DNA of 44,813 nt from Octopus bimaculoides (lineage: Eukaryota). This document shows positions 4,737-43,420 of the stretch, piece by piece (the stretch's first letter is position 1; the number at the start of each line of letters is the position of its first letter). The notes beneath the pieces were generated by a model. The model saw only the letters and a list, made by a program, of their open reading frames with translations, ran no database searches and was not told the origin of the DNA. The stretch spans positions 43,340,520 to 43,385,332 of the forward strand of contig NC_068992.1 of assembly GCF_001194135.2 (NCBI RefSeq), in the 5' to 3' direction. The position numbers were made by a program, and so were the translations under genes.

Positions 4737-5174
4737 TTTTTTTTCTTTTCTACTCTAAGCACAAAGTTCGAAAATTTTGTGGGAGGGGGCCAGTCGATTA
4801 GATCGACCGCAGTATGCAACTGGTACTTAATTTATCGACCCCGAAAGGATGAAAGGCAAAGTCGCCCCCTGCGAAATTTGGGCTCAGAACGTAAAGACAG
4901 ACGAAATACTGATAAGCATTTACCCCGGCGTGCTAACGTTTCTTATTTCTTTACTGCCCACAAGGGGCTACAAACAGAGGGGGAAAACAAGGACAGACAA
5001 ACGGATTAAGTCGATTATATCGACTCCAGTTCATAACTGGTACTTATTTAATCGACCCCCGAAAGGATAAAAGGCAAAGTCGACTTCGGCGGAATTTGAA
5101 CTCAGAACGTAGCGGCAGACGAAATACCGCTAAGCATTTCGCCCGGCGGCTAACGTTTCTGCCAGCTCACCGCC
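4737..5174 (-). mobile_element. Composite SINE S1: B-tailed unit (5174-4944) followed by A-tailed unit (4943-4737)
   Basis: Reverse complement starts GGCGGTGAGCTGGCAGAAACGTTAGC (A box) and has GAGTTCAAATTCC (B box). AGAAACGTTAGC is duplicated at 5149-5160 and 4932-4943. The two units end in different tails (..CCCCTTGTGGGCAGTAAAGAAATAAGAA vs ..TGTGCTTAGAGTAGAAAAG). Confidence 0.9.
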
Positions 5175-7491: not shown

Positions 7492-7706
7492 GGCGGTGAG
7501 CTGGCAGAAACGTTAGCACACCGGACTAAGAGTTTAGCGGTATTTCGACTGCCTTTACGTTCTGAGTTCAAATTCCGCCGAAGTCGACTTTGTCTTTCAT
7601 CCTTTCGAGGTCGATAAATTATGTACCATTTGCGTACTGGAGTCGATCTAATCGACTGGCCCACTCCCCAAAAATTTCGGGCCTTGTGCCTAGAGTAGGA
7701 AAAAAA
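7492..7706 (+). mobile_element. SINE S1, A-tailed monomer (empty-site form)
   Basis: GGCGGTGAGCTGGCAGAAACGTTAGC...GAGTTCAAATTCCGCCGAAGTCGACTTTG...GTCGATCTAATCGAC...GGCCTTGTGCCTAGAGTAGGAAAA; only one AGAAACGTTAGC (7506-7517). Confidence 0.9.
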
Positions 7707-14250: not shown

Positions 14251-15411
14251 TTTATACACACATATATACTTGTATGTATGCATGTATGTATGTATGTATG
14301 TATATATGTACAGGTAGGCGTATATCTATTATTTAAGCTGAATAAAACTTCACGAGACTACGCTAGCTTTTGGATCATCTGGTATTAATGGAGTTAACAA
14401 TAAGCATGTGTTTATATACACATAGTTTTATAATACCGTTGAAATCTCGCCAAAAGTTTGAAAATTAAGTTGTAATTTGAGTGGTTGTCAAAATCCAACA
14501 GAGCGAATGTAATAATTTACAGCTTACGAATAGAAAATAGAAATGAAAATGAGAAAATGTGAATAAGGAAAGAAACATAAAAAGATACAATTAAACTATC
14601 TATACCAATGGTATAACAAACTCATATGCATATATATATACACATATAAATATGTATATATATATGTATATATATATATATATATATATNNNNNNNNNNN
14701 NNNNNNNNNNNNNNNNNNNNNNNNNNNNNNNNNNNNNNNNNNNNNNNNNNNNNNNNNNNNNNNNNNNNNNNNNNNNNNNNNNNNNNNNNNNNNNNNNNNN
14801 NNNNNNNNNNNNNNNNNNNNNNNNNNNNNNNNNNNNNNNNNNNNNNNNNNNNNNNNNNNNNNNNNNNNNNNNNNNNNNNNNNNNNNNNNNNNNNNNNNNN
14901 NNNNNNNNNNNNNNNNNNNNNNNNNNNNNNNNNNNNNNNNNNNNNNNNNNNNNNNNNNNNNNNNNNNNNNNNNNNNNNNNNNNNNNNNNNNNNNNNNNNN
15001 NNNNNNNNNNNNNNNNNNNNNNNNNNNNNNNNNNNNNNNNNNNNNNNNNNNNNNNNNNNNNNNNNNNNNNNNNNNNNNNNNNNNNNNNNNNNNNNNNNNN
15101 NNNNNNNNNNNNNNNNNNNNNNNNNNNNNNNNNNNNNNNNNNNNNNNNNNNNNNNNNNNNNNNNNNNNNNNNNNNNNNNNNNNNNNNNNNNNNNNNNNNN
15201 NNNNNNNNNNNNNNNNNNNNNNNNNNNNNNNNNNNNNNNNNNNNNNNNNNNNNNNNNNNNNNNNNNNNNNNNNNNNNNNNNNNNNNNNNNNNNNNNNNNN
15301 NNNNNNNNNNNNNNNNNNNNNNNNNNNNNNNNNNNNNNNNNNNNNNNNNNNNNNNNNNNNNNNNNNNNNNNNNNNNNNNNNNNNNNNNNNNNNNNNNNNN
15401 NNNNNNNNNNN

Positions 15412-15785
15412 TATATATTTGTAAGTCCTGGTGTTTTTCTTATGTATTTGTCTGAATATTTTTTTTATTATACCTAAGGCACCTACTATGATAGGAATTG
15501 TTTCTGTTTTTAGATTCCATATTCGAGTTACCTCTATTTCCAGGTCTTTGTATTTTGAAAGGTTTTCCATTTCTTTTAGGGAAACGTTGTCATCTGCTGG
15601 TATTGATACATCAATTAGGAAGCATTTTTTTTCTTCATGATCTTTGACAACTATATCTGGTCTATTGGCCTTAATTTCTCTATCTGTGTGTATTGGCATA
15701 TCCCATAGAATGGTTGCTTTCTCGTTTTCTGTGACCTTTTCTGGCGTGTGTTTATACCATCTTTTTTCTGTTGTTATTCCAAGTT
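15412..15785 (-). mobile_element. R4/Dong-like non-LTR retrotransposon, 5'-truncated RLE endonuclease fragment (family A); 3' end lost in the N gap
   Basis: GITTEKRWYKHTPEKVTENEKATILWDMPIHTDREIKANRPDIVVKDHEEKKCFLIDVSIPADDNVSLKEMENLSKYKDLEIEVTRIWNLKTETIPIIVGALG: RPD..D..K..KY..L restriction-like endonuclease signature. Confidence 0.9.
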
Positions 15786-17134
15786 TTGATAAAGTCTTTG
15801 GTAAAATTGTTCATTGTTATTCATTAGTTTAATTATGAAAAGTACTGAGGTCCATATTGATAGGAAAAAGTGTATTTCAATCTTCAAGTGATTATACTCT
15901 GTGATGCTCGCCTTTGAAAATTGCATGAATATTCCGTATTTTTATCTCGGGTCTGGACATGCTTACCAGGTTAAAATTCCTTTAGGAATAATGGCCACCT
16001 GAAAGAAAAGTTTCACAGCATCTAACAGCTGATGGATATTGTGAGGACATTTCAGATGTGCAAAGCCTACAGTTACATAGACTTTACAATATCGATTGGT
16101 TCTGTTAAAATATCTCGCGTTATAATAGGACGGTCGTTGGTGTAGTGTTTGTAATTGGACGATAGACGTGGTGCTCCCCTTGTTCTTAAATGTAGATTGT
16201 ATATTTCATTGAATTTGTAAAGTGTCAGCCTGTGCAATTTCTTCAGGTGCCGCTAGCTGGTCTAATTGATTCTCGATATAGCAATTCTTTGAAGGAGCTA
16301 AAATATTTGAACGGATAAAAGCATCAATTTTGACAATTATAAAAAATGTTTGTTGGGGAGGAGCTGTTAAATGCTCGGTTTTAGAGGTGTTTAATGGTGA
16401 AAACATTGTTATTGCGGCACGAATAGCTAATATTATCAATGTATACCTTGAAGGGGATACATTTCTGCATATATGGATAGTAGGAGCAATACGGAATTCT
16501 CCACCAAGTCTGAGTTGTGGGGAACGTATAAGGCTAGGCCAGATTACATTCCTCTTCGTAGTTTTCCTCTGAATTGTGACGGAAGAATTCTACATATTAT
16601 CGTGGAGGAGTGTCTGTAAAAGTAGCTAATTAGAGCCTCGTGATAAATGGAGCTGCTATGTGGAAAATTTTACAGGGTATCAATCGACTCTCATATCGAT
16701 ACTGGTTCTCACGCTTTTTGCTATATACTGTGGATGATTTACGTTTCTGTGATTGTATGCAGTCCAGTTGTGTGGAATCTTATAACTATTCAGTGCTTAC
16801 CAGTCGCAGAGAAAATAGTTATCACTAAGATGTTTCTAATACATATATTCCATTAAAACACTTTTAAATCTGTCAGCATAATCTTTCATACTACATAGCC
16901 AATTTCAAAGCCATCATTTCTGTAGATACCGGAGCTACGTCTCAGATCCGCCACCTTCTTTGAATGACAATTCTGCATGGAGACGTAGAGCAGTGTGTTC
17001 CCCTCCTTTAAAACCTAGAATGAACTGATATGGTGTTGAAATATTTTCCAACGTTTATCACTAACTTTTTGTCTATGTTGACAGTCATAGTGAAATAATT
17101 ACCGAAGTTCAGATGATTTAGATATATGTGTATA

Positions 17135-17289
17135 AGAATGACTATTTGTTTAAGAAGCTCTCTTTGTAACCACTTTGTTTTGGGTTCCGTCCCACAATAC
17201 AGCATCTTGGACAAGGGTCTTTCACCAAAGCCCGTGTCTGTCAAAGCCTTTGGAGTGAATCTGGTTGACTGAAACGCTATGGAAGCTCG

Positions 17290-18431: not shown

Positions 18432-19004
18432 TANNNNNNNNNNTACACTCTGAACTCACATATAGATAAAACATCACATACATACGTATATGCATACATG
18501 CATACATACATACATATAAACATACATACATACATACATACATACATACAGACAGACGTACGTTCATGTATTCGCTGGTTTATTACACGTCTCTGAACCG
18601 TATCGTCGATATACGATGGCTGTATGTTTACAGTTTAGTTTTATGAAACTCTCCACACTGTCTTTCTTCTGTATTGACTAATTGGTATTTACATTTCAGA
18701 CAAACTATTACGTCATCTCACTTATACATTACAATATAAACATACATTCATATGTAAACAAAACAAAAATCCTTTCCGTTTTCTGGACGTCTTCCAAACC
18801 GCCATTGATTTCAATGCTAACTTATAAAACTTTTCTGCTTCAGGAAAATATTTTTAAAAAAATACTGTTTATATTATTTCCAAATATAGATTAATAAATA
18901 AATATTCGTGGTGTTATTGTTATTGTTGGTGTTATATAAATAACAAGAGCCATAATAATGATAACTATTATTGTTGTTGTTATTATTGGATTATTAAAAT
19001 CATT

Positions 19005-19226
19005 GGACCAAAAGTAAAAAGAAAAATCGTGTACAAAATCCTTGCGGTATTTCTGCAGGACTTTTACGTTCTGAGCTCGAATTCCGCCGTGGCCAACATT
19101 GTCTTTCATCCTCCCGCGGTCAATAAAATAAATATCTCTGAAGCACTGGGGTCGATATGCGACCAAGCAGTCCAAGCACCACAAATTTCTGACCTAGCAC
19201 CAAAATTAGAAACAGTTATTATTATT
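19005..19226 (+). mobile_element. Diverged SINE S1 with (ATT)n tail
   Basis: TTTACGTTCTGAGCTCGAATTCCGCCGTGGCCAAC...CACTGGGGTCGAT...CAAAATTAGAAACAGTTATTATTATT. Confidence 0.6.
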
Positions 19227-19231
19227 TTCAA

Positions 19232-19457
19232 AGCGTTAAACTGGTAAAATCATTACCGTGCCGGTTCGAATGCTTAGCAGCATTTCTTCCGATCTTTACA
19301 TCCTGAGTTCAGTTGCCACCGAATTTGACTTTCATTCCATCAGGATCGACTAAATAAAGGACTAGTTGAGTCCTGGGGTTGATCTATTCGCCTAGCATCC
19401 TCTCTGAACAAGATTTCAGGCATTGTGCCTATAGTAGAAAGGATCATCATTATTATT
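19232..19457 (+). mobile_element. Diverged SINE S1 (A-type) whose (ATT)n tail abuts the retroelement array
   Basis: GAATGCTTAGCAGCATTTC...CTGAGTTCAG...GGCATTGTGCCTATAGTAGAAAGGATCATCATTATTATT. Confidence 0.7.
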
Positions 19458-19459
19458 TT

Positions 19460-20012
19460 TGAGTGAGAGAGCAGTGCATGCCATCAAAGCGAGGCTGGGG
19501 TACAAATATACGAAGCCCAGTGTACCCATCATGACTACTCGTTTGATAAGGGTACACCAGGCACATGCATCACAAACATCTGCGCGAAAAGGTGATCTCA
19601 TATCAAGATTAAGAGCGCATGACCTTGCAGGTGGGGCCCAGTTAGAGTTTTCTTCAGGTCGAGTAGCCCATCCCGCTCAAAAGGTCCCTCAATAAGGGTT
19701 GTTTAAGGATGTTGAACGAAAGACCCATGTTTCCAAAGGTGAGTTATTCAAACCCCAAAGAATTCCTCTCAACACATGTCTATGATGTTTCCCACTACTT
19801 CTACTCGTGATCAGAGATGCACATATCGTCAGCCATTAAGGGACAGACTCAACAGGTTAAGTTCAAACAAGTGACAAGCAAATCTGTGATATTGAGTAGA
19901 ATATTTAATGTAGCTTATCTTTTATACCAAGGAAAACAGTATACATGATAACACTTCCAATCAGTTGAGATGAGAAGTCATGAAAGCCACTGCCTGATAC
20001 TGCATCGGGGTA

Positions 20013-20013
<1 letters not shown>
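19460..20013 (-). mobile_element. ~550-bp TAA-flanked non-autonomous element, copy 1
   Basis: Clear end-to-end similarity to 22984-23529 and 23693-24253; flanked by (TAA)n. Strand is inferred from tail polarity shared with the neighbouring R4-like LINEs. Confidence 0.8.

Positions 20014-20067
<54 letters not shown>
20014..20067. repeat. (ATT)n/(TAA)n microsatellite, array spacer
   Basis: Directly visible. Confidence 0.98.
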
Positions 20068-20070
<3 letters not shown>

Positions 20071-20322
20071 TAGTTTTATTTTTATAACGTGCTTTCACTT
20101 CACTACCGAGCGCAGCTCTGTGCGCCTTGGGTACGTGCTGTGGTTTGCTGTGGTGCTCTTATGTTTACTGTATTGAAAGTGTTTTGCGTAGAATGTGTGC
20201 AGTACCCAGTAGTGCAATTTTCTGTATGTTATATATATTTATAAGTCCTCGTGTTTTTCTTATGTATTTGTCTGAATATTTTTTTTATTATACCTAAGGC
20301 ACCTACTATGATAGGAATTGTT
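20068..20322 (-). mobile_element. R4/Dong-like LINE 3' end (family A), 5'-truncated, (TAA)n on both sides
   Basis: TIPIIVGALGII, then after a frameshift KYSDKYIRKTRGLINIYNIQKIALLGTAHILRKTLSIQ*, a ~100-nt 3' UTR and an (AAT)n tail. Near-identical to 15412-15502. Confidence 0.9.
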
Positions 20323-20329
20323 ATTATTA

Positions 20330-20408
<79 letters not shown>

Positions 20409-20440
20409 CATCATTATTATTTTTATTATTATTATTATCA
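20323..20440. repeat. (ATT)n microsatellite, array spacer
   Basis: Directly visible. Confidence 0.98.
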
Positions 20441-20583
20441 TATACATTCAACAGATTAAACTGTTGGAAAAGAAAAAATCCTAACTCTGGGCTACAACAA
20501 GTAACCTTATATGCCAAGAACCCTCAACAGTATCCTTCCTGCCCCTAATAACACTGTTTTCTGGAGCTGTACAAAACTGGATT
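20441..20583 (-). mobile_element. R4/Dong-like LINE extreme 3' end (family C)
   Basis: Minus frame reads VQLQKTVLLGAGRILLRVLGI*, homologous to the family A terminus QKIALLGTAHILRKTL; followed by a short UTR and (ATA)n. Confidence 0.7.
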
Positions 20584-20584
20584 T

Positions 20585-22983
20585 TTATTATTATTATTTC
20601 TTTTTTATTACAGGTTTTGTTGGAACTGCTGGACTGTTGCGTAGCGGGCTTGGTACCATGCTATCCGTTCTTTTCAGTTATCTAATACTTTCCTTATTAT
20701 TATTTTTGTAACAGTTCTACTGGGCACTCTATTCTGATTTCCTCTATATTCTTCTTGACACCTGATACTGTTCCCTAGGATCCAACGATAATCGACACTA
20801 TCTTCACCTTCCTCATTTTCCATAGCCGGGCTATTTCGTACTTAAGAGGGTTGCATCTATCTTTTTATTGTCTTCCTTCTTGACTATTCGTGGGTCAAAG
20901 GTGTATGTAGCATCAACTATATAGTGCATGTGGTGCATCATGTCGACCACCACTAGAACCGGTCTGTTATGCTCCAACACCTGATCTGTTTGGATTGGGA
21001 AATTCCACAGGATTTTGCTAATCTCCGACTCCGCCACTCTCTGCGGTTTGTTCTCATACCATGTTTCGCCTCTCTCTAGCCCCCACTTTTCACACAGTTT
21101 CCAATATAGCACTTTCGTTACCTGACCATGTCTCCACAACTTATAGTGGCTTTCGTCATTTGTTTTTGATATCGGCAATGGGTTCATCCACTCAGATGCG
21201 GCACAGCGGAGACACTTGCTCATTCTTAAGTTTGGCCTTCCAATTCGTGGCCAAAGCTTGGTCTTCCGCTACCAGTATAGTGCTCTCAGTCTCTTTCTGT
21301 AGTGTTCCTTTCCTCACCTGTTGTGCCTACATGGAATTGATGATGTACTCACTTCTTGCGTAATTCTTCGTCATGTTCTTCTTATACTCCTTCCTTTATT
21401 TTCCCTTTTTTTCTCTGCTCTCAATATTCCCTCGTTCCTGACTGTCATTAGCAAGGTTTCCTTACTTTAGGCTAGGTATCTCATTAAACTCTCGAGTTCG
21501 ATACGGACACAGTCTTCCACACTTATCAGTCCCCTTTCTACATTTGTTCTCTTCATGTATAGGTGATCAGTGTCTGCAGGTGGATGATGGGCTCCATGCA
21601 TCTTTATGAGCTTTCTTGACTTCCTGTCCATCTCCTTTAGCTCCTCCTCTGTCCGCTTCAGGATTCCAGTGCCATACCGACCTTCTGCAACTGCGCGCGT
21701 GTTTATTGCCGAAATTAAGATTCTGGCATTCAGCTTTGAAACCAATATTTTTCTCACTCGCCATAGGTACTCTCTTTCTGTCTTTTCCTTTATGCTGTGG
21801 TGTTTGATTCAATCTGCCTCAAGTATTCTCAGGTATTTATAGCTGGATTGAGGTTGCATTGCCTTCATTAGTTCACCACTTGGCAACCCTATGCCTTCTG
21901 TTCTGACGAGCTTTCCTCGTTTCATCACCATCGTAGCACGTTTTGAGAGCCCAAACTTCATTTTAATATCATTGGAGAAATTCTACACAGACTGGACTAG
22001 ACTGTCCAGTTCTGCCTCACATTTATGAATAACAAGTCGTCCATGAATAACAAGTGCTTCAGTTTTTTCTTACCTCTTCCCAGGTCATACCCCAGCTTTG
22101 TTTTCTGTAGTATTTCACTCAAGGGGATCATTCCCAGCACAAAAATCAGTGGGGTCACATTGTCCCTCTGGAAGATTCCTCTCTTGATTTTCACCTCTCC
22201 TAATACTTGATTCCCTGCTGTCAATTCTGTTCGCCAACATTTCATATTGTTCCATATAAGGTTTCTGATGTTTCCTGCTACTCCATATATTTCCATTGTT
22301 CTTATTATCCGGCAGTCTGATATCATATCGTATGCTTTACGATAATCAATCCATGCCATACTCAGGTTTGTGTGTCTTCTTTTGCAGTTTCTGATAATTA
22401 CATAATCGATTAAGAGTTGATCCTTCATTCCCCCGACTCCTCTTTCGACACCATTTCTGTTCAGTAGCAGCCCATTTTTTACGAAGTATCTCTACAGTTC
22501 ACTGGCCAAAGCACCTGATATTAGTTGCCACATTAGCGAAAGACACGTAATTGGTCGAAAGATGGATGGAACTTTTCCCTTTCCAGGATCCTTGACGCAT
22601 AACAATGTTTTTTCCCCCTTTGTCATCTAGCTGGGTACTGCGTCTTCCTGCAAGCACTCATCTAGCAGTTTCGCAATCCTTTGATGGGAGCCCTCCCAGC
22701 TTCTTCATCCAATAACCTTGGACTCCATCTGGTCCTGAACTCTTCTAATTTCGGAATTCTCTTAACTGCTTTTTTATCATTCCTGCGGTTATTTTTATGT
22801 CTTCTTGGCCTTCTATATTTCTTAACCTATCATGAATTTCATGCAGCCACTCCACTTCATCGTTATGCTCTACAATTTAGTTCCAGATCCCTCTCCAGAA
22901 TGCACTGCTTTCCTCTGCATCTGACATCATTGTTACGTGTAACTGCCAATCTAGTTCCTGAAACAGTTTCTTCTAATTTTTTT
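20585..22983 (-). pseudogene. R4/Dong-like LINE (family B), 5'-truncated; RT, thumb, zinc knuckle and RLE disrupted by stops and frameshifts
   Basis: GPDGVQGYWMKKL; FRPITCLSLMWQL; [20 protein letters not shown]; [18 protein letters not shown]; HLLFMDDL; KLNARILISAINTRAV; RHGQVTKVLYWKLC; ILWNFPIQTDQVLEHNRP. 3' UTR ends in AATAATAATAA at 20585-20597. Confidence 0.95.
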
Positions 22984-23526
22984 CAATGAAAAAGCAGCGC
23001 ATTCCTTCAAAGTGACACTAGAGTACAAATATACAAAGCCCAATATACCCAACATGACTACACATCTGATAAAGGTACACCAAATACATGCATCACAACC
23101 GTATGTACGTGACATATTGATCTCATATCTAAATAAACTGTGCATGACCTTGCAGATGGGGCCCAGTTAGAATTCTCTTCAGGTTGATTAGCCCATTCCG
23201 CTCGAATGGTGACTGAACAAAGTTTGTTTAAGGATGTTGAACGAAACACCTAAATTTCCAGAAGTGAATTATTGAAATCCCAAAGAATTCCTCTCGACAA
23301 ATGGCTATGATGTTGCCCCACTACTTCTGCTCATGATCGGAGATGCACATATCATCAGCCACTCAACTGATTAAGGTCAAGCAACTGAGAAACAAATCAG
23401 TGATATTGAGCAGAATATTTGCTGTAGCCCATCTTTTATACCAAGACAAAACAATGTACATGATAACACTTCCAATCAGTTAAGATCAAAAGCCATGAGA
23501 GCTAATGTCTGGTACTGCATCAGGGC

Positions 23527-23529
<3 letters not shown>
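22984..23529 (-). mobile_element. ~550-bp TAA-flanked non-autonomous element, copy 2
   Basis: Homologous to copies 1 and 3; abuts the truncated 5' end of the family B LINE. Confidence 0.8.
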
Positions 23530-23596
<67 letters not shown>

Positions 23597-23613
23597 TATT
23601 ATTATTATTATCA

Positions 23614-23678
<65 letters not shown>

Positions 23679-23690
23679 TATTTTTATTTT
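23530..23690. repeat. (ATT)n microsatellite, array spacer
   Basis: Directly visible. Confidence 0.98.
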
Positions 23691-23692
23691 TT

Positions 23693-24253
23693 CATTGAGT
23701 GAGAGAGCAATGTATGCCATTAAAGTGACACTGGAGTACAAATATACGAAGCTCAATATACCTAACATGACTACAGATTTGATGAGGGTACACAAGGCAC
23801 ATGCATTACAACCATATGTGCACAACATGGTGATCTCATATCAAGATTAACAGCGAATGAACTTGCAGGTGGGGCCTAGTTAGAATTTTCTTTAGGTTGA
23901 GTAGCCCATCCTGCTCAAAAGGTTCCTGGATAAGGAAGGGTTGTTTGACGGATGATAAACAAAATACTCGTGTTCCCAGGGGTGAATTATTGAGACCCCA
24001 AAGAATCCCTCTCGACAAATGGCTATGATATTCCCCCACTACTTCTGCTCGTGATCAGAGATGCACCAAGGGACATGCTCAACTGGCTAAGGTCAAACAA
24101 CTAAACAACTGACAACCAATTTGTGGTATTGAAAAAAATATTTGCTGTAGTCCATCTTTTATACCAAGACAAAGCAATGTACATGATAACACTTCCAATC
24201 AGTTAAGATTACAAGCCATGAGAGCCACTGCCTGGTACTGCATCAGGTCATTT
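23693..24253 (-). mobile_element. ~550-bp TAA-flanked non-autonomous element, copy 3
   Basis: Homologous to copies 1 and 2, with a short internal deletion near 24065. Confidence 0.8.
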
Positions 24254-24256
24254 ATA

Positions 24257-24257
<1 letters not shown>

Positions 24258-24306
<49 letters not shown>
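24258..24306. repeat. (ATT)n microsatellite, distal end of the array
   Basis: Directly visible. Confidence 0.98.
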
Positions 24307-24308
<2 letters not shown>

Positions 24309-24580
24309 GTATTATCGTTGTTGTTGTTGTGTCGTTATCATCATCCTCATCATCTTTATAATTACTGAACGACATCACCATGTTCCAATGCAAAGGCGTC
24401 TTCAATATGAAACCATATTCACAGTAGAATAGAAATTTTTCCTCCAGCTTTACCCGGGGCACATTACGTAGAGCAAAATATTGTCCCCCCGCAAATATTC
24501 CAGCATCAAATCGATTCCTGGAGAAGCCATTTTACCAATTTAGATCTAATTGCAATATTGCAATTCAGATGGAGCCATAA

Positions 24581-24594
24581 CAACAACAACAACA

Positions 24595-24641
<47 letters not shown>

Positions 24642-24642
24642 A
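24581..24642. repeat. (AAC)n(TAC)n compound microsatellite
   Basis: Directly visible. Confidence 0.95.
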
Positions 24643-24944
24643 GCAACATTTTCTTGACATTATTGGATTAAAAGAATCGTTAGAGTTTCAGAGAAATGCT
24701 TTGCGGTCTTTGTCTCCAGTTCTTTACTTTCTCAATTCAAATCATAAACAAGCCATCCCGAGATATCAAGAGATTGTGGAGGCAACACGCACACATACAC
24801 ATATATACATATGTGTGTGTGTGTGTGAGAGAGAGACAGACAGACAGACAGACAGAGACAGAGAGAGACAGAGAGAGACAGAGAGACAGAGAGAGAGACG
24901 GGTTTCTTTCAGTCTCCGTCAACTAAATTGACTTAAAATTCTTT

Positions 24945-25060
24945 TGTCAACCCAGGGTTGTAGTAGAATACAATTGCCAAGTTACCACACAGTAGGACTG
25001 AAACTGGAGACATTTGGTTGAAAAGCAAACTTATTACCGTAGAGCAACGTTCGTGCCTGT
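24945..25060 (-). mobile_element. Degenerate SINE S2 head
   Basis: Reverse complement ..GGTAATAAGTTTGCTTTTCAACCAAATGTCTCCAGTTTCAGTCCTACTGTGTGGTAACTTGGCAATTG.. matches the S2 head. Confidence 0.6.
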
Positions 25061-25433
25061 AAGGATTGGTAACATAAAGTACAAGTCTTTGTAACATAAA
25101 GTACAGATTTTGCACAAAAATCGATTGCGACGACTTCATATCACCTCAAAATTGCTGGCGTAGTGACAATGTAAAGATTTATTAGGATGGTGTAAGAGCA
25201 TATCTTTGGAGAGTGATACAAAACAGCCTTGCTATATCTGGCCCGGTTCTTTGCTTTTCAATTTCGAACCCCAACAACTATGTCTTACATTCCTCTGGGA
25301 GTTGGTAAGATTAAGTAAAAAATCAAATGTTAAGTTCTATGATATCGACTGACTCCATTCCCTTAAGATTGCTGGCCTCGTTTCGAAAGCAGACACTGTA
25401 GTTATTAATACCATTAGTATTGATTGCTGTTAA

Positions 25434-25540
25434 GGCGGCGAGCTGGCAAAATCCTTTGTGCACCGCACAAAATGTTAACCAGCATTTCTTCCGGTCCTGA
25501 CTTTTCACTTTCACGGTCTCGAAAAAAGTACCAGTTAAAC
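25434..25540 (+). mobile_element. SINE S1 fragment, internally deleted
   Basis: GGCGGCGAGCTGGCAAAATC...CACAAAATGTTAACCAGCATTTC...AAAGTACCAGTT. Confidence 0.55.
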
Positions 25541-25597
25541 TTGTGCTGAAATTAGATCGCTTATCATTGTTGTTAAAGTACCGAGCCGGCAGAATGT

Positions 25598-26509
25598 GAG
25601 GCTATCATGTTCACTGCAGATGAAATGACCTTGGCCTTCTTTGGAGTAGATAAGGAGGGAAGTTTGAACAGCACGGATTGTCTCTTTGTCTATGGCTCAA
25701 AGTGATGAAGCCAATACACATCCTGGGTTCGGAATCATTCAAGGAGACCAGCCGGATCTGACTGAAACAATGCCAGATTTTCTCGTGATGTGATCAATCT
25801 GGAGCGCATTTGATCTGGTGTCAGAAGACAAGGGCACCCATGCCTTGCCAAATTCATTGTGCAGAATATTTTAAATTCTATCACAGGATATTCTAATAGT
25901 ATTGGCTATTTGATTCATAGTCAATCGCTTCTAGTCTGTTACTATGTGGTGAAACAGGGTCAATGTTTTCCTCTGTGGTGGCAGTTGCAGAGCGTCCAGA
26001 CCATGGGTCATCTTCAAGACTCACCCATACCCTCCTAAAGTCAGCTGCCTACTTTTGCACTGTCGATAAAGCTGAAACGTCAACCCCCTGATGTAGCAAC
26101 AATGTCAGTATGAACGGTCTTGGGGGTTAAACCCTTTTTCTGCAGGTATTTGATAACAGCACGATGCCAATTTCTTTTCCATTTTCAAGACAGGCAGTTA
26201 CTAGTTATTTCGAAATCCTCTTTGAACAGTCAGATTACCTTGGGAAAAACAAACGTGGTTATTTATTAGGTTGTACAAAAAATAATGGCCGATTTTAAAA
26301 ATAAGCCTATATTCTTGAAAAACTGAACTTATACAATACAAAGGCTTAATCATTCAAAACATGATCTCTGAACAGCTATGCATTTCTCCCATCGATTAAC
26401 AAGGTCATCTATGCCTCTTCGATAAGAGCTGAAATTAATCTGTGCAAGATTTCACAGCTCTAGCGTCACTCCTTCATAGTCAGCCTATAATCTTTTCAGC
26501 CCACTCTCG
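25598..26509 (-). mobile_element. Mariner-type DNA transposon, 5' half only, degenerate
   Basis: Terminus TA|CGAGAGTGGGCTGAAAAG at 26509; ATG at 26182. Decayed frames: WHRAVIKYLQKKGLTPK, SLEDDPWSGRSATATTEEN, AWVP, LLTPDQ, TQDVYWLHHFEP, TPKKAKVISSA. No third-Asp region or second TIR. Confidence 0.85.
26266..26422 (-). mobile_element. 3' end plus one TIR of a second (Hsmar1-like) mariner, nested in the 5' UTR of the element above
   Basis: TTAGGTTGTACAAAAAATAATGGCCGATTTT at 26266 resembles the Hsmar1 TIR; minus frame RGIDDLVNRWEKCIAVQRSCFE* is a mariner C-terminus; TA at both junctions. Confidence 0.7.
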
Positions 26510-26721
26510 TATACAATGTAAGTGGATATGTGAATATATGTGTGTGTGCATGTGTGTGTATTTGTGAGCATGTGGGTGAATATATATCTGCAGTCCTACG
26601 ACTCATGAAGCCGGTTTACTTGATTTCCGTGCCGAGTAGCCGGCCCAGATCACAACACTCCCTGAACGGAACACTTGCAATTTTAACAGGTGATAAGTGT
26701 ATCACATCGACACCTCCATCA

Positions 26722-26785
26722 TTACCACTACCACCACCACCACCACCATCACCACCACCACCATCACCACCACCACCACCACCCC
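26722..26785. repeat. (CAC)n/(CAT) trinucleotide repeat
   Basis: Directly visible. Confidence 0.95.
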
Positions 26786-27080
26786 CGAAACTTAATTTCA
26801 TTGAATCTTAAGGCATTAAGGAGAGGAAAAAATTGACTATGATGGAAATGAACCCAGAGCATAAAGNNNNNNNNNNNNNNNNNNNNNNNNNNNNNNNNNN
26901 NNNNNNNNNNNNNNNNNNNNNNNNNNNNNNNNNNNNNNNNNNNNNNNNNNNNNNNNNNNNNNNNNNNNNNNNNNNNNNNNNNNNNNNNNNNNNNNNNNNN
27001 NNNNNNNNNNNNNNNNNNNNNNNNNNNNNNNNNNNNNNNNNNNNNNNNNNNNNNNNNNNNNNNNNNNNNNNNNNNNNNNN

Positions 27081-31457: not shown

Positions 31458-32075
31458 GCGTAGGGGAGGTTGTGTAGTAAGAAGCTTGCCGGGCGAAATG
31501 CTTAGCGGTATTTCGTCTGCCGTTACGTTCTGAGTTCAAATTCCGCCGAGGTCGACTTTGCCTTTCATCCTTTCGGGGTCGATAAATTAAGTACCAGTTA
31601 CGCACTGGGGTCGATGTAATCGACTTTATCCCTTTGTCTGTCCTTGTTTGTCCCCTCTATGTTTAGCCCCTTGTGGGCAATAAAGAAATAAGAAGCTTGC
31701 TTCCCAACCACTTGGTTTGGGGTTCACTCCCACGTGGTAGTTGTGGCAAGTGTCTTCTGTTATAGCCACGAGCTGATCAAAGCCTTGTGAGTGAATATGG
31801 TAGAGTTAAACTTAAAGAAGCCCGTCGTATATAGTATATATATGTATGTATGTGTGTATGAGTGTTTGTGTGTGTGTGTCCGTCCAACGTCGCTTGACAA
31901 CCGATGCTGGTGTGTTTATATCCCCGTAACCTAGTGGTTCGGTAAAAGAGACCGACAGAATAAGTACTAGGCTTACAAAGAATAAGTCCTGTGGTCGACT
32001 TGCTCGACTAAAGGCGGTGCTCCAGCATGGCCGTAATCAAAATGACTGAAATAAGTAAAAAGAATGAAAAGAAGA
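31458..32075 (+). mobile_element. SINE S2, near full length, interrupted in its head by an S1-B insertion
   Basis: The head TGTGTAGTAAGAAGCTTGC resumes at 31695 as GCTTGCTTCCCAACCAC..., and ends GGCGGTGCTCCAGCATGGCCGTAATCAAAATGACTGAAATAAGTAAAA. Confidence 0.9.
31490..31694 (+). mobile_element. SINE S1-B, 5'-truncated, inserted in the S2 head
   Basis: CGGGCGAAATGCTTAGCGG...GTTTAGCCCCTTGTGGGCAATAAAGAAATAAGAA, flanked by the direct repeat TAAGAAGCTTGC (31478-31489 and 31689-31700). Confidence 0.95.
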
Positions 32076-34006: not shown

Positions 34007-34197
34007 GGCGCAGAAGTGGCTGTGTGGTAAGTAGTTTGCTTACCAACCACATGGATCCGGGTTCAGTCGCACTGCGTGGCACATTGGGCAAGCGTCTTCT
34101 ATTATAGCCTCGAATCGTCCAAAGCCTTGTGAGTGGATTTGGTAGACGGAAACTGAAAGAAGCTCGTCGTATATATCTATATGTGTGTGTGTGCGTG

Positions 34198-39175: not shown

Positions 39176-39224
<49 letters not shown>

Positions 39225-40514: not shown

Positions 40515-40840
40515 TTTCTACTCTAGGCACAAGGCCTAAAACTTTTGGGAATGGAGCCAGTCGAATAGATACACTCCAGTAAGCAACTAGTATTTAATTT
40601 AACGACCCCGTAAGGATGAAAGGCAAAGTCGACCTCGGCGGAATTTGAACTCAGAATGTAACATCAGACGAAATACCGCTAAGCATTTCGCCCGGCTTGC
40701 TAACGTTTCTTATTTCTTTATTACCCACAAGGGGCTAAACATAGAGGGGACAAACAAGGACAGGCAAAGGGATTAAGTCGATTACATCGATCCGCTAAGC
40801 ATTTCGACCGGCACGCTAACGTTTCTGCCAGCTCACCGCC
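40515..40840 (-). mobile_element. Composite SINE S1: internally deleted B-tailed unit plus A-tailed unit
   Basis: AGAAACGTTAGC duplicated at 40815-40826 and 40699-40710. The B unit jumps from GCTTAGCGG directly to ATCGATGTAATCGAC at ~40791, losing the B box. Confidence 0.9.
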
Positions 40841-42971: not shown

Positions 42972-43420
42972 TCATTATTCATTATTCAGAATTCTTGGAA
43001 AAAGAGAAAGAACTGGTTTCTAACCTACATTCAAGGTCCCTTGATTGGAATTTCAACATCAACAACAGGGTATTTTGTTTGTATGTATATATATTTTATG
43101 TATGTATTCTCATGCATTTAGTTGCATATCTAGACATGCCCATATATATTTAACTGATACTTCTAGAAAGTTTTACAGATTTTTACAGTTCCAGAGATGG
43201 ATTGGACCTGTAGTATTCGAATTAGCTTTCTCAAGATTGATATTTAGGCGGTGTGTTACATATCCCAGAGCGCCAATAATAACAGGTATAAACCTGAATT
43301 TGTAATCTGGGTAGAGTAACTGCAGATTTCTCAATAGTCCAGCATAGGTGTTCTCTTTACACAACTGTGCAGAGTCTCTCTTCTCTATCCCAAATCATTA
43401 TATCAGGTTTGCCGTGCATG
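42972..43420 (-). mobile_element. RLE-type non-LTR retrotransposon 3' end (fourth family), internally deleted
   Basis: KPDIMIWDREERLCTVV / KENTYAGLLRNLQLLYPDYKFRFIPVIIGALGYVTHRLNINLEK / LIRILQVQSISGTVKICKTF*, then a 3' UTR ending TGAATAATGAATAATGA. Confidence 0.8.

What the first reader, a model, noticed from the sequence alone, without database searches (positions are those of the whole stretch)
19460..24306. Multi-family, head-to-tail retroelement array built inside a (TAA)n microsatellite
Seen, reading the minus strand from 24306: (AAT)n, 550-bp element, (AAT)n, 550-bp element, 2.4-kb family B LINE, (AAT)3, family C 3' end, (AAT)n, family A 3' end, (AAT)n, 550-bp element, short AAT. All three LINE pieces point the same way with AAT-type tails. 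Established: Bombyx Dong and related R4-clade RLE elements insert into TAA repeats. Inference: at least four families share one target, and each insertion regenerates a (TAA)n tail that recruits the next. The result is a self-propagating landing-pad array reminiscent of telomeric retroelement arrays, but at an interstitial site.
Basis: partly seen in the sequence, partly recalled or inferred. Interest (0 to 1): 0.72.

Follow-up and report, generated by a model that had tools for sequence, protein, structure and literature searches.

The report
Dong-type retroelement pile-up in TAA repeat
A 4.9-kb stretch of what is probably an octopus genome holds six retroelement copies, all pointing the same way and separated by TAA repeats. 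This is the expected footprint of Dong-type LINEs, which insert only into TAA microsatellites, so it is a clean example of a known behaviour, not a new mechanism.

Summary
Window 19443-24315 (minus strand) reads: (AAT)n, S1, (AAT)n, S2, LINE B, short AAT tail, LINE fragment C, (AAT)n, LINE fragment A, (AAT)n, S3, short AAT. It contains no assembly gaps.

One correction. B runs on through its stop codon, 3'UTR and its own short tail.

The LINE pieces encode a reverse transcriptase, a CCHC knuckle and an R2-type restriction-like endonuclease (RLE). Intact relatives in other assemblies lie between same-strand (TAA)n tracts, and three loci are three-copy head-to-tail arrays. Published work shows that Dong elements of the R4 clade target TAA repeats.

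The 550-bp element S is non-coding and has one sharp 5' end. All four 5' junctions seen abut TAA, including a 5'-truncated copy in an unrelated scaffold. It behaves as a non-autonomous passenger.

Best reading: successive, orientation-specific insertions into a TAA tract that each insertion renews. This is a known kind with new members. Clade assignment by RT phylogeny and a genome-wide census could not be done. Interest is low to moderate.

The parts
24258..24315 (-). (AAT)19 tract upstream of S1. No recognisable element lies 5' of it, so it is probably a remnant of the original target microsatellite.
   Evidence: TRF; sequence
23695..24253 (-). S1, a full-length copy of the ~555-bp non-coding element S. 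It starts AAATGACCTGATGCAG and ends CTCTCACTCAA.
   Evidence: blastn; alignment A1
23529..23694 (-). Tail of S1: an A-rich start followed by (AAT)~52 with interruptions. It is also the 5' flank of S2.
22982..23530 (-). S2, a full-length S copy. Only A7T (22973-22981) separates it from LINE B.
20611..22977 (-). LINE B, 5'-truncated at about aa 362 of a ~1157-aa ORF. RT lies at about 22565-21825 and the CCHC plus degraded RLE (NRPV for NRPD) at about 21215-20830. There is a 24-nt deletion near 20712, a stop codon near 20683, then the 3'UTR. It carries at least 11 in-frame stops and at least 5 frameshifts.
   Evidence: comparison with the L001 3' end
20582..20610 (-). B's own short tail, TAATAAAAAAGAAATAATAATAATAAAAA.
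20440..20581 (-). C, a 142-bp 5'-truncated 3' end of a different LINE lineage. It encodes ...LQKTVLLGAGRILLRVLGI* and is followed by a 3'UTR.
20317..20439 (-). (AAT)~40, the tail of C and the 5' flank of A.
20068..20322 (-). A, a ~250-bp 5'-truncated 3' end of a third LINE lineage (IPIIVGALG...IQKIALLGTAHILRKTLSIQ*) plus its 3'UTR. It is young: 97.6% identical to a second copy at 15412-15496.
20011..20067 (-). (AAT)19, the tail of A and the 5' flank of S3.
19459..20015 (-). S3, a full-length S copy.
19443..19458 (-). Short tail of S3, AAATAATAATGATGAT. It marks the end of the array; an unrelated dispersed SINE follows.
15412..15800 (-). Second copy of LINE family A, outside the array. It is 5'-truncated, has an intact RLE reading frame (ANRPDIVVKD...IDVS...KE.E) and runs into an N gap. 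It serves as an age reference for A.

Best explanation
This is an interstitial (TAA)n microsatellite, in what is probably an Octopus genome, that was hit repeatedly by TAA-specific retrotransposition. The hits came from three lineages of Dong-type (R4-clade-like) LINEs and a 555-bp non-coding passenger element, S.

Inferred mechanism, from Dong and R2 biology:
- The element's restriction-like endonuclease nicks the TAA duplex in one polarity.
- The (UAA)n 3' tail of the RNA pairs with the nicked strand and primes reverse transcription.
- Copying often stops early, which gives 5'-truncated copies.
- The new copy ends up between TAA repeats and brings a fresh TAA tail.

Later insertions of any family that uses the same machinery land next to earlier ones in the same orientation.

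Shown here: the anatomy, the co-orientation, the RT/CCHC/RLE content, TAA on both sides of intact relatives, arrays in relatives, and the independence of the S copies. Inferred: the cleavage specificity, priming by the tail, and mobilisation of S by these LINEs.
For: - Anatomy and tracts.
- B covers aa 362-1141 of intact relative P0001. RVT_1 matches at E = 1.5e-10. There are 613 homologues, most of them about 1130 aa long and with a single ORF.
- All 71 full-length homologues examined carry the CCHC motif. The C-terminal profile hits the CCHC knuckle and endonuclease of solved R2 proteins at E = 2e-7. Full-length P0001 hits R2 at 2e-25 against 1e-15 for L1 ORF2.
- Intact or truncated relatives in L001-L009 are flanked on both sides by same-strand TAA. 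Across 19 oriented loci there are 43 same-strand tracts and 2 opposite-strand tracts.
- L002, L003 and L009 are each head-to-tail arrays of three LINE copies separated by (TAA)n.
- All four S 5' junctions seen abut TAA. One is a 5'-truncated copy in the unlinked scaffold L038.
- That unlinked copy is as similar to S1-S3 (76-81%) as S1-S3 are to each other (77-84%).
- The elements differ in age. A is 97.6% identical to a second copy, while B is riddled with stops.
- Another SINE family in the same window has mixed orientation.
- Literature: Dong targets TAA (PMC3812793), Dong's 5' end abuts TAA repeats (PMC3774820), and Dong-R4 LINEs are abundant and recently active in octopus (PMC13282606, PMC8967140).
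Against: - No RT phylogeny against reference R4, Dong, NeSL, CRE or HERO sequences could be made, so the clade is inferred.
- S shares no detectable 3' sequence with A, B or C. Its link to these LINEs therefore rests only on its tail and target.
- The second A copy at about 15800 has no clean TAA tract on its 5' side, so targeting is not absolute, or that flank has decayed.
- A free (AAT)16 tract at 39176-39223 carries no element.
- Only one genomic window and one extra S copy were available, so there is no genome-wide statistic.
- The S2/B junction lacks TAA and the B/C junction has almost none. A single chimeric event could also produce those two junctions.
Confidence: 0.8

Rival explanations
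1. Part of the array was made in one event. During target-primed reverse transcription the RT jumped from the 5' end of one RNA template onto the 3' end of another TAA-tailed RNA, joining elements head to tail (for example C-B-S2) without separate integrations.
For: The S2/B junction has only A7T and the B/C junction only about 29 nt of degenerate tail. Every other junction has 57-166 bp of TAA.
Against: The elements differ in age: A is young and B is heavily decayed. The long, separate TAA tracts at the other junctions fit separate insertions. Insertion close to the start of an existing tail gives the same junctions.
Confidence: 0.12
2. The elements merely carry TAA-type tails and insert without target preference. 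The cluster is then chance nesting in an AT-rich region, with the tails later expanding into microsatellites.
For: Retroposon A-rich tails are a known source of TAA microsatellites (PMC3812793). The second A copy has no clean 5' TAA tract.
Against: S1, the L038 copy, and the full-length LINEs in L001 and L008 have TAA directly at their 5' ends with no upstream element to supply it. The strand bias is 43 to 2. All six pieces are co-oriented, whereas another SINE family in the window is not.
Confidence: 0.04
3. The S copies and their TAA spacers arose by local tandem duplication or unequal crossing-over between TAA tracts, not by retrotransposition.
For: S1 and S2 are adjacent and separated only by a microsatellite that could mediate unequal exchange.
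Against: S1, S2 and S3 are equidistant from one another, and no closer to each other than to an unlinked copy. Each has private indels. Different LINE families are interleaved among them.
Confidence: 0.02
4. The order of the pieces is a short-read assembly artefact across TAA tracts.
For: The window is a gapped draft scaffold with 11 N-runs. TAA tracts of 57-166 bp are hard to span with short reads.
Against: There are no Ns inside 18444-26866. The repeated units are about 20% diverged and so are not collapsible. The same architecture occurs in megabase contigs of relatives at about 270x coverage.
Confidence: 0.04

Closest known systems
Dong (Bombyx mori) and the Dong-like elements DongAg and DongBg, in the R4 clade of RLE-encoding non-LTR retrotransposons
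   Same: Single-ORF LINE with RT, a CCHC knuckle and a restriction-like endonuclease. It inserts into (TAA)n, has a TAA-type tail, and its 5' end abuts TAA repeats. A mollusc member (from Biomphalaria) is already known (PMC3812793, PMC3774820).
   Different: No sequence comparison with reference Dong or R4 was possible. The 5'UTR does not resemble the Bombyx Dong 5' end quoted in the primer of PMC3774820. Here three lineages and a non-coding passenger sit in one tract.
R2 and its non-autonomous derivatives (SIDEs)
   Same: Homologous RT and homologous CCHC plus RLE domain. Both are target-specific and orientation-specific, and both have non-autonomous passengers that use the same target.
   Different: R2 targets a unique 28S rDNA site and has N-terminal zinc-finger and Myb domains. 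No such domains were seen in P0001 (Pfam finds only RVT_1; by eye). R2 SIDEs are derived from R2 ends, whereas S shows no homology to the LINE ends available.
Other microsatellite-specific LINEs (Kibi in TC, Koshi in TTC, Waldo and Mino in AC-type repeats, Togen in TG)
   Same: The target is a simple repeat that the element's own tail reproduces, so copies pile up in repeats (PMC3812793, PMC4640811).
   Different: They have different repeat targets, and several of them use an APE-type endonuclease instead of an RLE-type one.
Telomeric retroelement arrays (SART/TRAS in Bombyx TTAGG repeats; HeT-A/TART/TAHRE in Drosophila)
   Same: Several families lie head to tail in one orientation within or at a simple-repeat target.
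   Different: Those arrays are terminal and linked to telomere maintenance. This array is interstitial, small (4.9 kb), mostly decayed, and shows no sign of host function.

Membership tests
RLE-encoding non-LTR retrotransposons (R2 group in the broad sense) | Reverse transcriptase domain of the LINE type | tested here: met
   PF00078 matches at E = 1.5e-10 on the stitched B translation. P0001 matches R2 proteins in the PDB at 2e-25.
RLE-encoding non-LTR retrotransposons (R2 group in the broad sense) | C-terminal CCHC knuckle followed by a PD-(D/E)xK restriction-like endonuclease, with no APE domain | tested here: met
   The CCHC motif is present in all 71 full-length homologues examined. Profile A3 aligns to the R2 CCHC knuckle and endonuclease region (KPD...D...K) at E = 2e-7. 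Pfam finds no Exo_endo_phos domain. In B itself the PD motif has decayed to PV. The A copy at 15412-15699 keeps NRPD.
Dong / R4 clade | Insertion into (TAA)n in a fixed orientation, with TAA on both sides | tested here: met
   The window array. Relatives L001-L009. 43 same-strand tracts against 2 opposite-strand tracts. Arrays in L002, L003 and L009.
Dong / R4 clade | 3' end carrying TAA-type repeats | tested here: met
   The tails of A, B, C and S, and the tails of L001-L009.
Dong / R4 clade | RT phylogeny groups the element with R4, Dong and Rex6, and not with R2, NeSL, CRE or HERO | not testable with these tools
   No reference sequences of these clades were available. Only solved R2 proteins could be compared.
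Dong / R4 clade | HDV-like self-cleaving ribozyme at the exact junction of TAA and the element's 5' end (PMC3774820) | tested here: inconclusive
   No Rfam ribozyme family hits the LINE 5'UTRs. A conserved 5' stem pair is 100% paired with 2 compensatory changes in 8 sequences. A home-made HDV-like descriptor, with no positive control, gives one solution at the junction in each of L001 and L004, and 3-6% of shuffles do as well. In the L003 lineage a conserved ~165-nt leader precedes this block, which argues against cleavage there.
SINE (Pol III, tRNA/5S/7SL-derived) | tRNA-, 5S- or 7SL-related head with internal promoter boxes | tested here: not met
   ARAGORN finds no tRNA in the window. Rfam finds no tRNA, 5S or 7SL match in 19000-25000 at E <= 1. 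S is better described as a non-autonomous, LINE-dependent retroposon of unknown origin.
Non-autonomous LINE-dependent retroposon (for S) | Non-coding, multi-copy, variable 5' truncation, and the same tail and target as an autonomous LINE | tested here: met
   No conserved ORF. There are 3 copies in the window, 1 in L038 and 2 behind Octopus bimaculoides gene models. The L038 copy is 5'-truncated and lies between (AAT)10 and (AAT)4. Sharing of LINE 3'UTR sequence was tested and not found.

The most novel reading that the evidence does not exclude
S is a previously undescribed kind of passenger for Dong-type LINEs. It would be recognised only through its (UAA)n tail and target, with a precisely defined 5' end made by an unknown processing signal. 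Head-to-tail arrays like this one would then also act as source loci: one read-through transcript is cut into several element RNAs, so the array propagates at the RNA level as well as by attracting insertions.
Probability: 0.1. Interest if true: 0.55.

Novelty: new member of a known kind. Interest (0 to 1): 0.3.

Why it matters
The locus is a compact, gap-free illustration of how a microsatellite-specific LINE family and its passenger turn one TAA tract into a growing, co-oriented cluster of retroelements.

For octopus genomics it links the abundant 'Dong-R4' LINEs, and at least one of the many unclassified SINE-like families, to a specific target. That link explains part of the association between simple repeats and retroelements in these genomes.

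It also warns annotators that AAT-rich coding remnants can be mistaken for element tails. It does not change what is known about the mechanism.

Tried and rejected
1. S as a tRNA-derived SINE or a carrier of a known ribozyme. ARAGORN and Rfam at E <= 1 found nothing relevant in 19000-25000.

2. The S 5' end as a derivative of the conserved LINE 5'UTR block. By eye the two share AGTACCRGG and TCTCATGG. nhmmer with a 10-sequence profile found no hit on S, so the idea was rejected.

3. An HDV-like fold at the S 5' end. A home-made descriptor gave 0 solutions in S1-S3. RNAalifold on three copies showed no covariation. The descriptor had no positive control, so this is weak negative evidence.

4. 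A shared 'TGGTTGTG' hairpin between S and the LINE 3'UTRs. It is not conserved among the S copies, so the idea was dropped.

5. Rejected by tblastn to aa 1141 and by the IIIRKVLDN* reading.

6. Finding the same locus, or O. bimaculoides scaffolds, through exact-protein look-ups of a window ORF and of P0260. Neither is on record.

7. Searching for same-genome full-length family A elements with the A C-terminal peptide. Only short fragments at no more than 86% identity turned up.

8. A metagenome scan with the LINE 5'UTR motif. It gave 11 true LINE 5' ends, all from one lineage, and 17 GC-rich bacterial chance hits.

9. Searching the C-terminal domain as a single sequence against the PDB. It found nothing. 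The profile search was needed.
Full report
**What is there**

Read on the minus strand, window 24315 to 19443 contains the following pieces, in order:

| Piece | Coordinates | Notes |
|---|---|---|
| (AAT)19 | 24258-24315 | No recognisable element upstream |
| S1 | 23695-24253 | Full-length S |
| A-rich start, then (AAT)~52 | 23529-23694 | Tail of S1 |
| S2 | 22982-23530 | Full-length S |
| A7T | 22973-22981 | Only separator before B |
| LINE B | 20611-22977 | 5'-truncated |
| B's short tail | 20582-20610 | |
| LINE fragment C | 20440-20581 | 142 bp |
| (AAT)~40 | 20317-20439 | Tail of C |
| LINE fragment A | 20068-20322 | About 250 bp |
| (AAT)19 | 20011-20067 | Tail of A |
| S3 | 19459-20015 | Full-length S |
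| AAATAATAATGATGAT | 19443-19458 | Short tail of S3 |

TRF reports the four long tracts. A TAA 15-mer occurs 94 times in the window against 0 in shuffles, and 83 of those matches lie on the minus strand inside the array. The window is a gapped draft scaffold with 11 N-runs, but none falls between 18444 and 26866.

- tblastn with the closest intact relative, P0001 (1157 aa, 55% identity), aligns aa 362-1141 to 22990-20703.
- Frame 0 reads ...TKIIIRKVLDN*.
- The DNA matches the L001 element on both sides of a 24-nt deletion that removes the codons for ACLLGTAR.

B therefore keeps its stop codon, a roughly 75-nt 3'UTR and its own short tail. The 3'UTR shares the AGCATGG(G)TACC block with L001. 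It encodes ...LQKTVLLGAGRILLRVLGI*.

**What the LINE pieces are**

- The stitched B translation matches Pfam RVT_1 at E = 1.5e-10. It carries at least 11 stops and at least 5 frameshifts, so this is an old copy.
- It has 613 homologues, most of them single ORFs of about 1130 aa on 3.6-4 kb contigs.
- P0001's best solved relatives are R2 proteins (2e-25), ahead of L1 ORF2 (1e-15).
- All 71 full-length homologues examined carry a C-x2-C...H...C knuckle.
- A profile of the C-terminal 200 residues, which included the window's own family A peptide, aligns to the CCHC knuckle and endonuclease region of R2 proteins (KPD...D...K) at E = 2e-7.

These are RLE-type LINEs. A, B and C share no nucleotide similarity and have clearly different C-termini, so they are three lineages of one superfamily. 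A is young: it is 97.6% identical to a second, longer copy at 15412-15800 that still has an open RLE frame.

**Target specificity in relatives**

I fetched nine loci that encode relatives.
- Full-length elements lie between same-strand TAA repeats. In L001 the layout is (TAA)n, then AAAT, then TCCCCG..., ORF, 3'UTR and (AAT)17. The L008 contig begins with (AAT)18 and ends in (AAT)5.
- Across 19 LINE-bearing loci, oriented by the LINE, there are 43 same-strand TAA tracts (1638 bp) and 2 opposite-strand tracts (27 bp).
- L002, L003 and L009 each hold three co-oriented LINE copies, full-length and 5'-truncated, separated by (TAA)n.
- Two of these loci lie on contigs of 1.1 and 3.4 Mb whose names record about 270x coverage. 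The architecture is therefore unlikely to be peculiar to short-read assembly.

The architecture of the finding is the normal habit of this LINE group.

**Literature**

- Dong targets TAA microsatellites in Bombyx, Anopheles and the snail Biomphalaria (PMC3812793, citing Kojima and Fujiwara 2004 and Xiong and Eickbush 1993).
- Dong belongs to the R4 lineage. Its 5' end abuts TAA repeats, where an HDV-like ribozyme cleaves (PMC3774820).
- RLE clades are mostly target-specific (PMC4640811).
- Dong-R4 LINEs are abundant and recently active in octopus, with 5 families and 1129 recent insertions in O. vulgaris (PMC13282606; see also PMC8967140).

**The 550-bp element S**

- The three copies are 79-80% identical to one another.
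- They begin at the same base (AAATGCCCTGATGCAG) directly after (TAA)n, and end CTCTCACTCAA followed by an A-rich stretch and AAT repeats.
- They have no conserved ORF, no tRNA-like head and no Rfam match.
- A spurious antisense ORF from the S consensus finds two UniRef 'uncharacterized proteins' of Octopus bimaculoides (96% and 89% identity) and one marine-metagenome scaffold. This places the family, and probably the window, in Octopus.
- On that scaffold (L038) the S copy is 5'-truncated to its last ~180 nt and lies between (AAT)10 and (AAT)4. This is the signature of target-primed reverse transcription into a TAA tract.
- The unlinked copy is as similar to S1-S3 (76-81%) as S1-S3 are to each other (77-84%). 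The array copies are therefore independent insertions, not local duplicates.
- S shares no 3' sequence with A, B or C. Its dependence on these LINEs is inferred from its tail and target only.

**Controls inside the window**

- A different dispersed SINE family has about seven copies, two of them directly downstream of the array. Its copies lie on both strands.
- The only other sizeable TAA tract, (AAT)16 at 39176-39223, lies on the opposite strand and carries no recognisable element.

**Mechanism**

The best-supported reading is successive, orientation-specific insertions into one TAA tract. Each insertion is bracketed by TAA and adds a new TAA tail. The mixed ages support separate events: A is young, B is decayed, and the S copies are about 20% diverged from one another.

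The two junctions with almost no TAA (S2/B and B/C) could also come from template switching within a single event. This cannot be decided here.

**5' processing**

- The relatives' 5'UTRs share a conserved block. Its first two helices are 100% paired in 8 sequences, with 2 compensatory changes.
- A home-made HDV-like descriptor finds one solution exactly at the TAA/element junction in each of L001 and L004, and none in S1-S3.
- Rfam sees no ribozyme in these 5'UTRs.
- One lineage carries a conserved ~165-nt leader upstream of the block.

The ribozyme question stays open, and the origin of S's sharp 5' end is unexplained.

**Verdict**

This is a known kind of system (Dong-type TAA-specific LINEs) with new members: three octopus lineages and a non-coding passenger. 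It does not reveal a new mechanism.

Not done, because the data were not available: an RT phylogeny against reference clades, a genome-wide flank census, and long-read confirmation of this locus.

Noticed in passing
window 15412-15800 (minus): A second, longer copy of LINE family A with an open RLE reading frame (ANRPDIVVKD...IDVS...) runs into the N gap at 14690-15411. It shares with the array copy an A8 homopolymer that shifts the frame before the C-terminal LLGTAHILRK motif. Its 5' flank is only degenerate AT-rich sequence, not a clean TAA tract.
   Followed up: partly
window 43242-43416 (minus): A 3' fragment of another RLE-type LINE (KPDIMIWD...IIGALGYV), weakly similar to P0001, lies next to an N gap and an (AT)n/(ATAC)-type repeat. 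It has no TAA tail, so it may be a lineage with a different repeat target.
   Followed up: no
window 39176-39223 (plus): A free (AAT)16 tract of the opposite polarity to the array, with no recognisable retroelement on either side. It looks like an unoccupied potential target.
   Followed up: partly
window 19000-19442, 31496-31625, 40515-40688, 7534-7701, 5009-5139, 4824-4895: A different dispersed SINE-like family, 70-79% identical between copies, occurs on both strands. Two copies lie in tandem directly downstream of the array. I used it as an orientation control.
   Followed up: partly
window 24897-25250 (minus) and 34026-34168 (plus): A repeat that ends in GACGGARACTGAAAGAARCYCGTC is followed immediately by dinucleotide or tetranucleotide microsatellite. 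There are 2 exact matches against 0 expected, and a partial match near 17282. It may be another microsatellite-associated retroposon family.
   Followed up: partly
window 24325-24345 and 19443-19450: Both outer edges of the array carry GAT repeats: gatgatgaggatgatgataac upstream, and aataataatgatgat downstream. They may be remnants of an original compound (GAT)n(AAT)n microsatellite at the empty site.
   Followed up: no
L001 2799-2920; L003, L004, L007 and L013-L037 5'UTRs: There is a conserved ~120-nt 5'UTR block in the LINE relatives (TCCCCG...CCGGGTTGGCGTCCGGCGGGG...TCTCATGGG...GATGGTGTCNCGATAAAA). Two of its helices are supported by compensatory changes. In L001 and L004 the block starts exactly at the TAA junction. 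In the L003 lineage a conserved ~165-nt leader precedes it.
   Followed up: partly
L004, L005, L008 and similar 3.6-4 kb metagenome contigs: Many contigs that encode full-length relatives are barely longer than the element and stop in or near TAA repeats. The assemblies seem to break at the microsatellite target.
   Followed up: no
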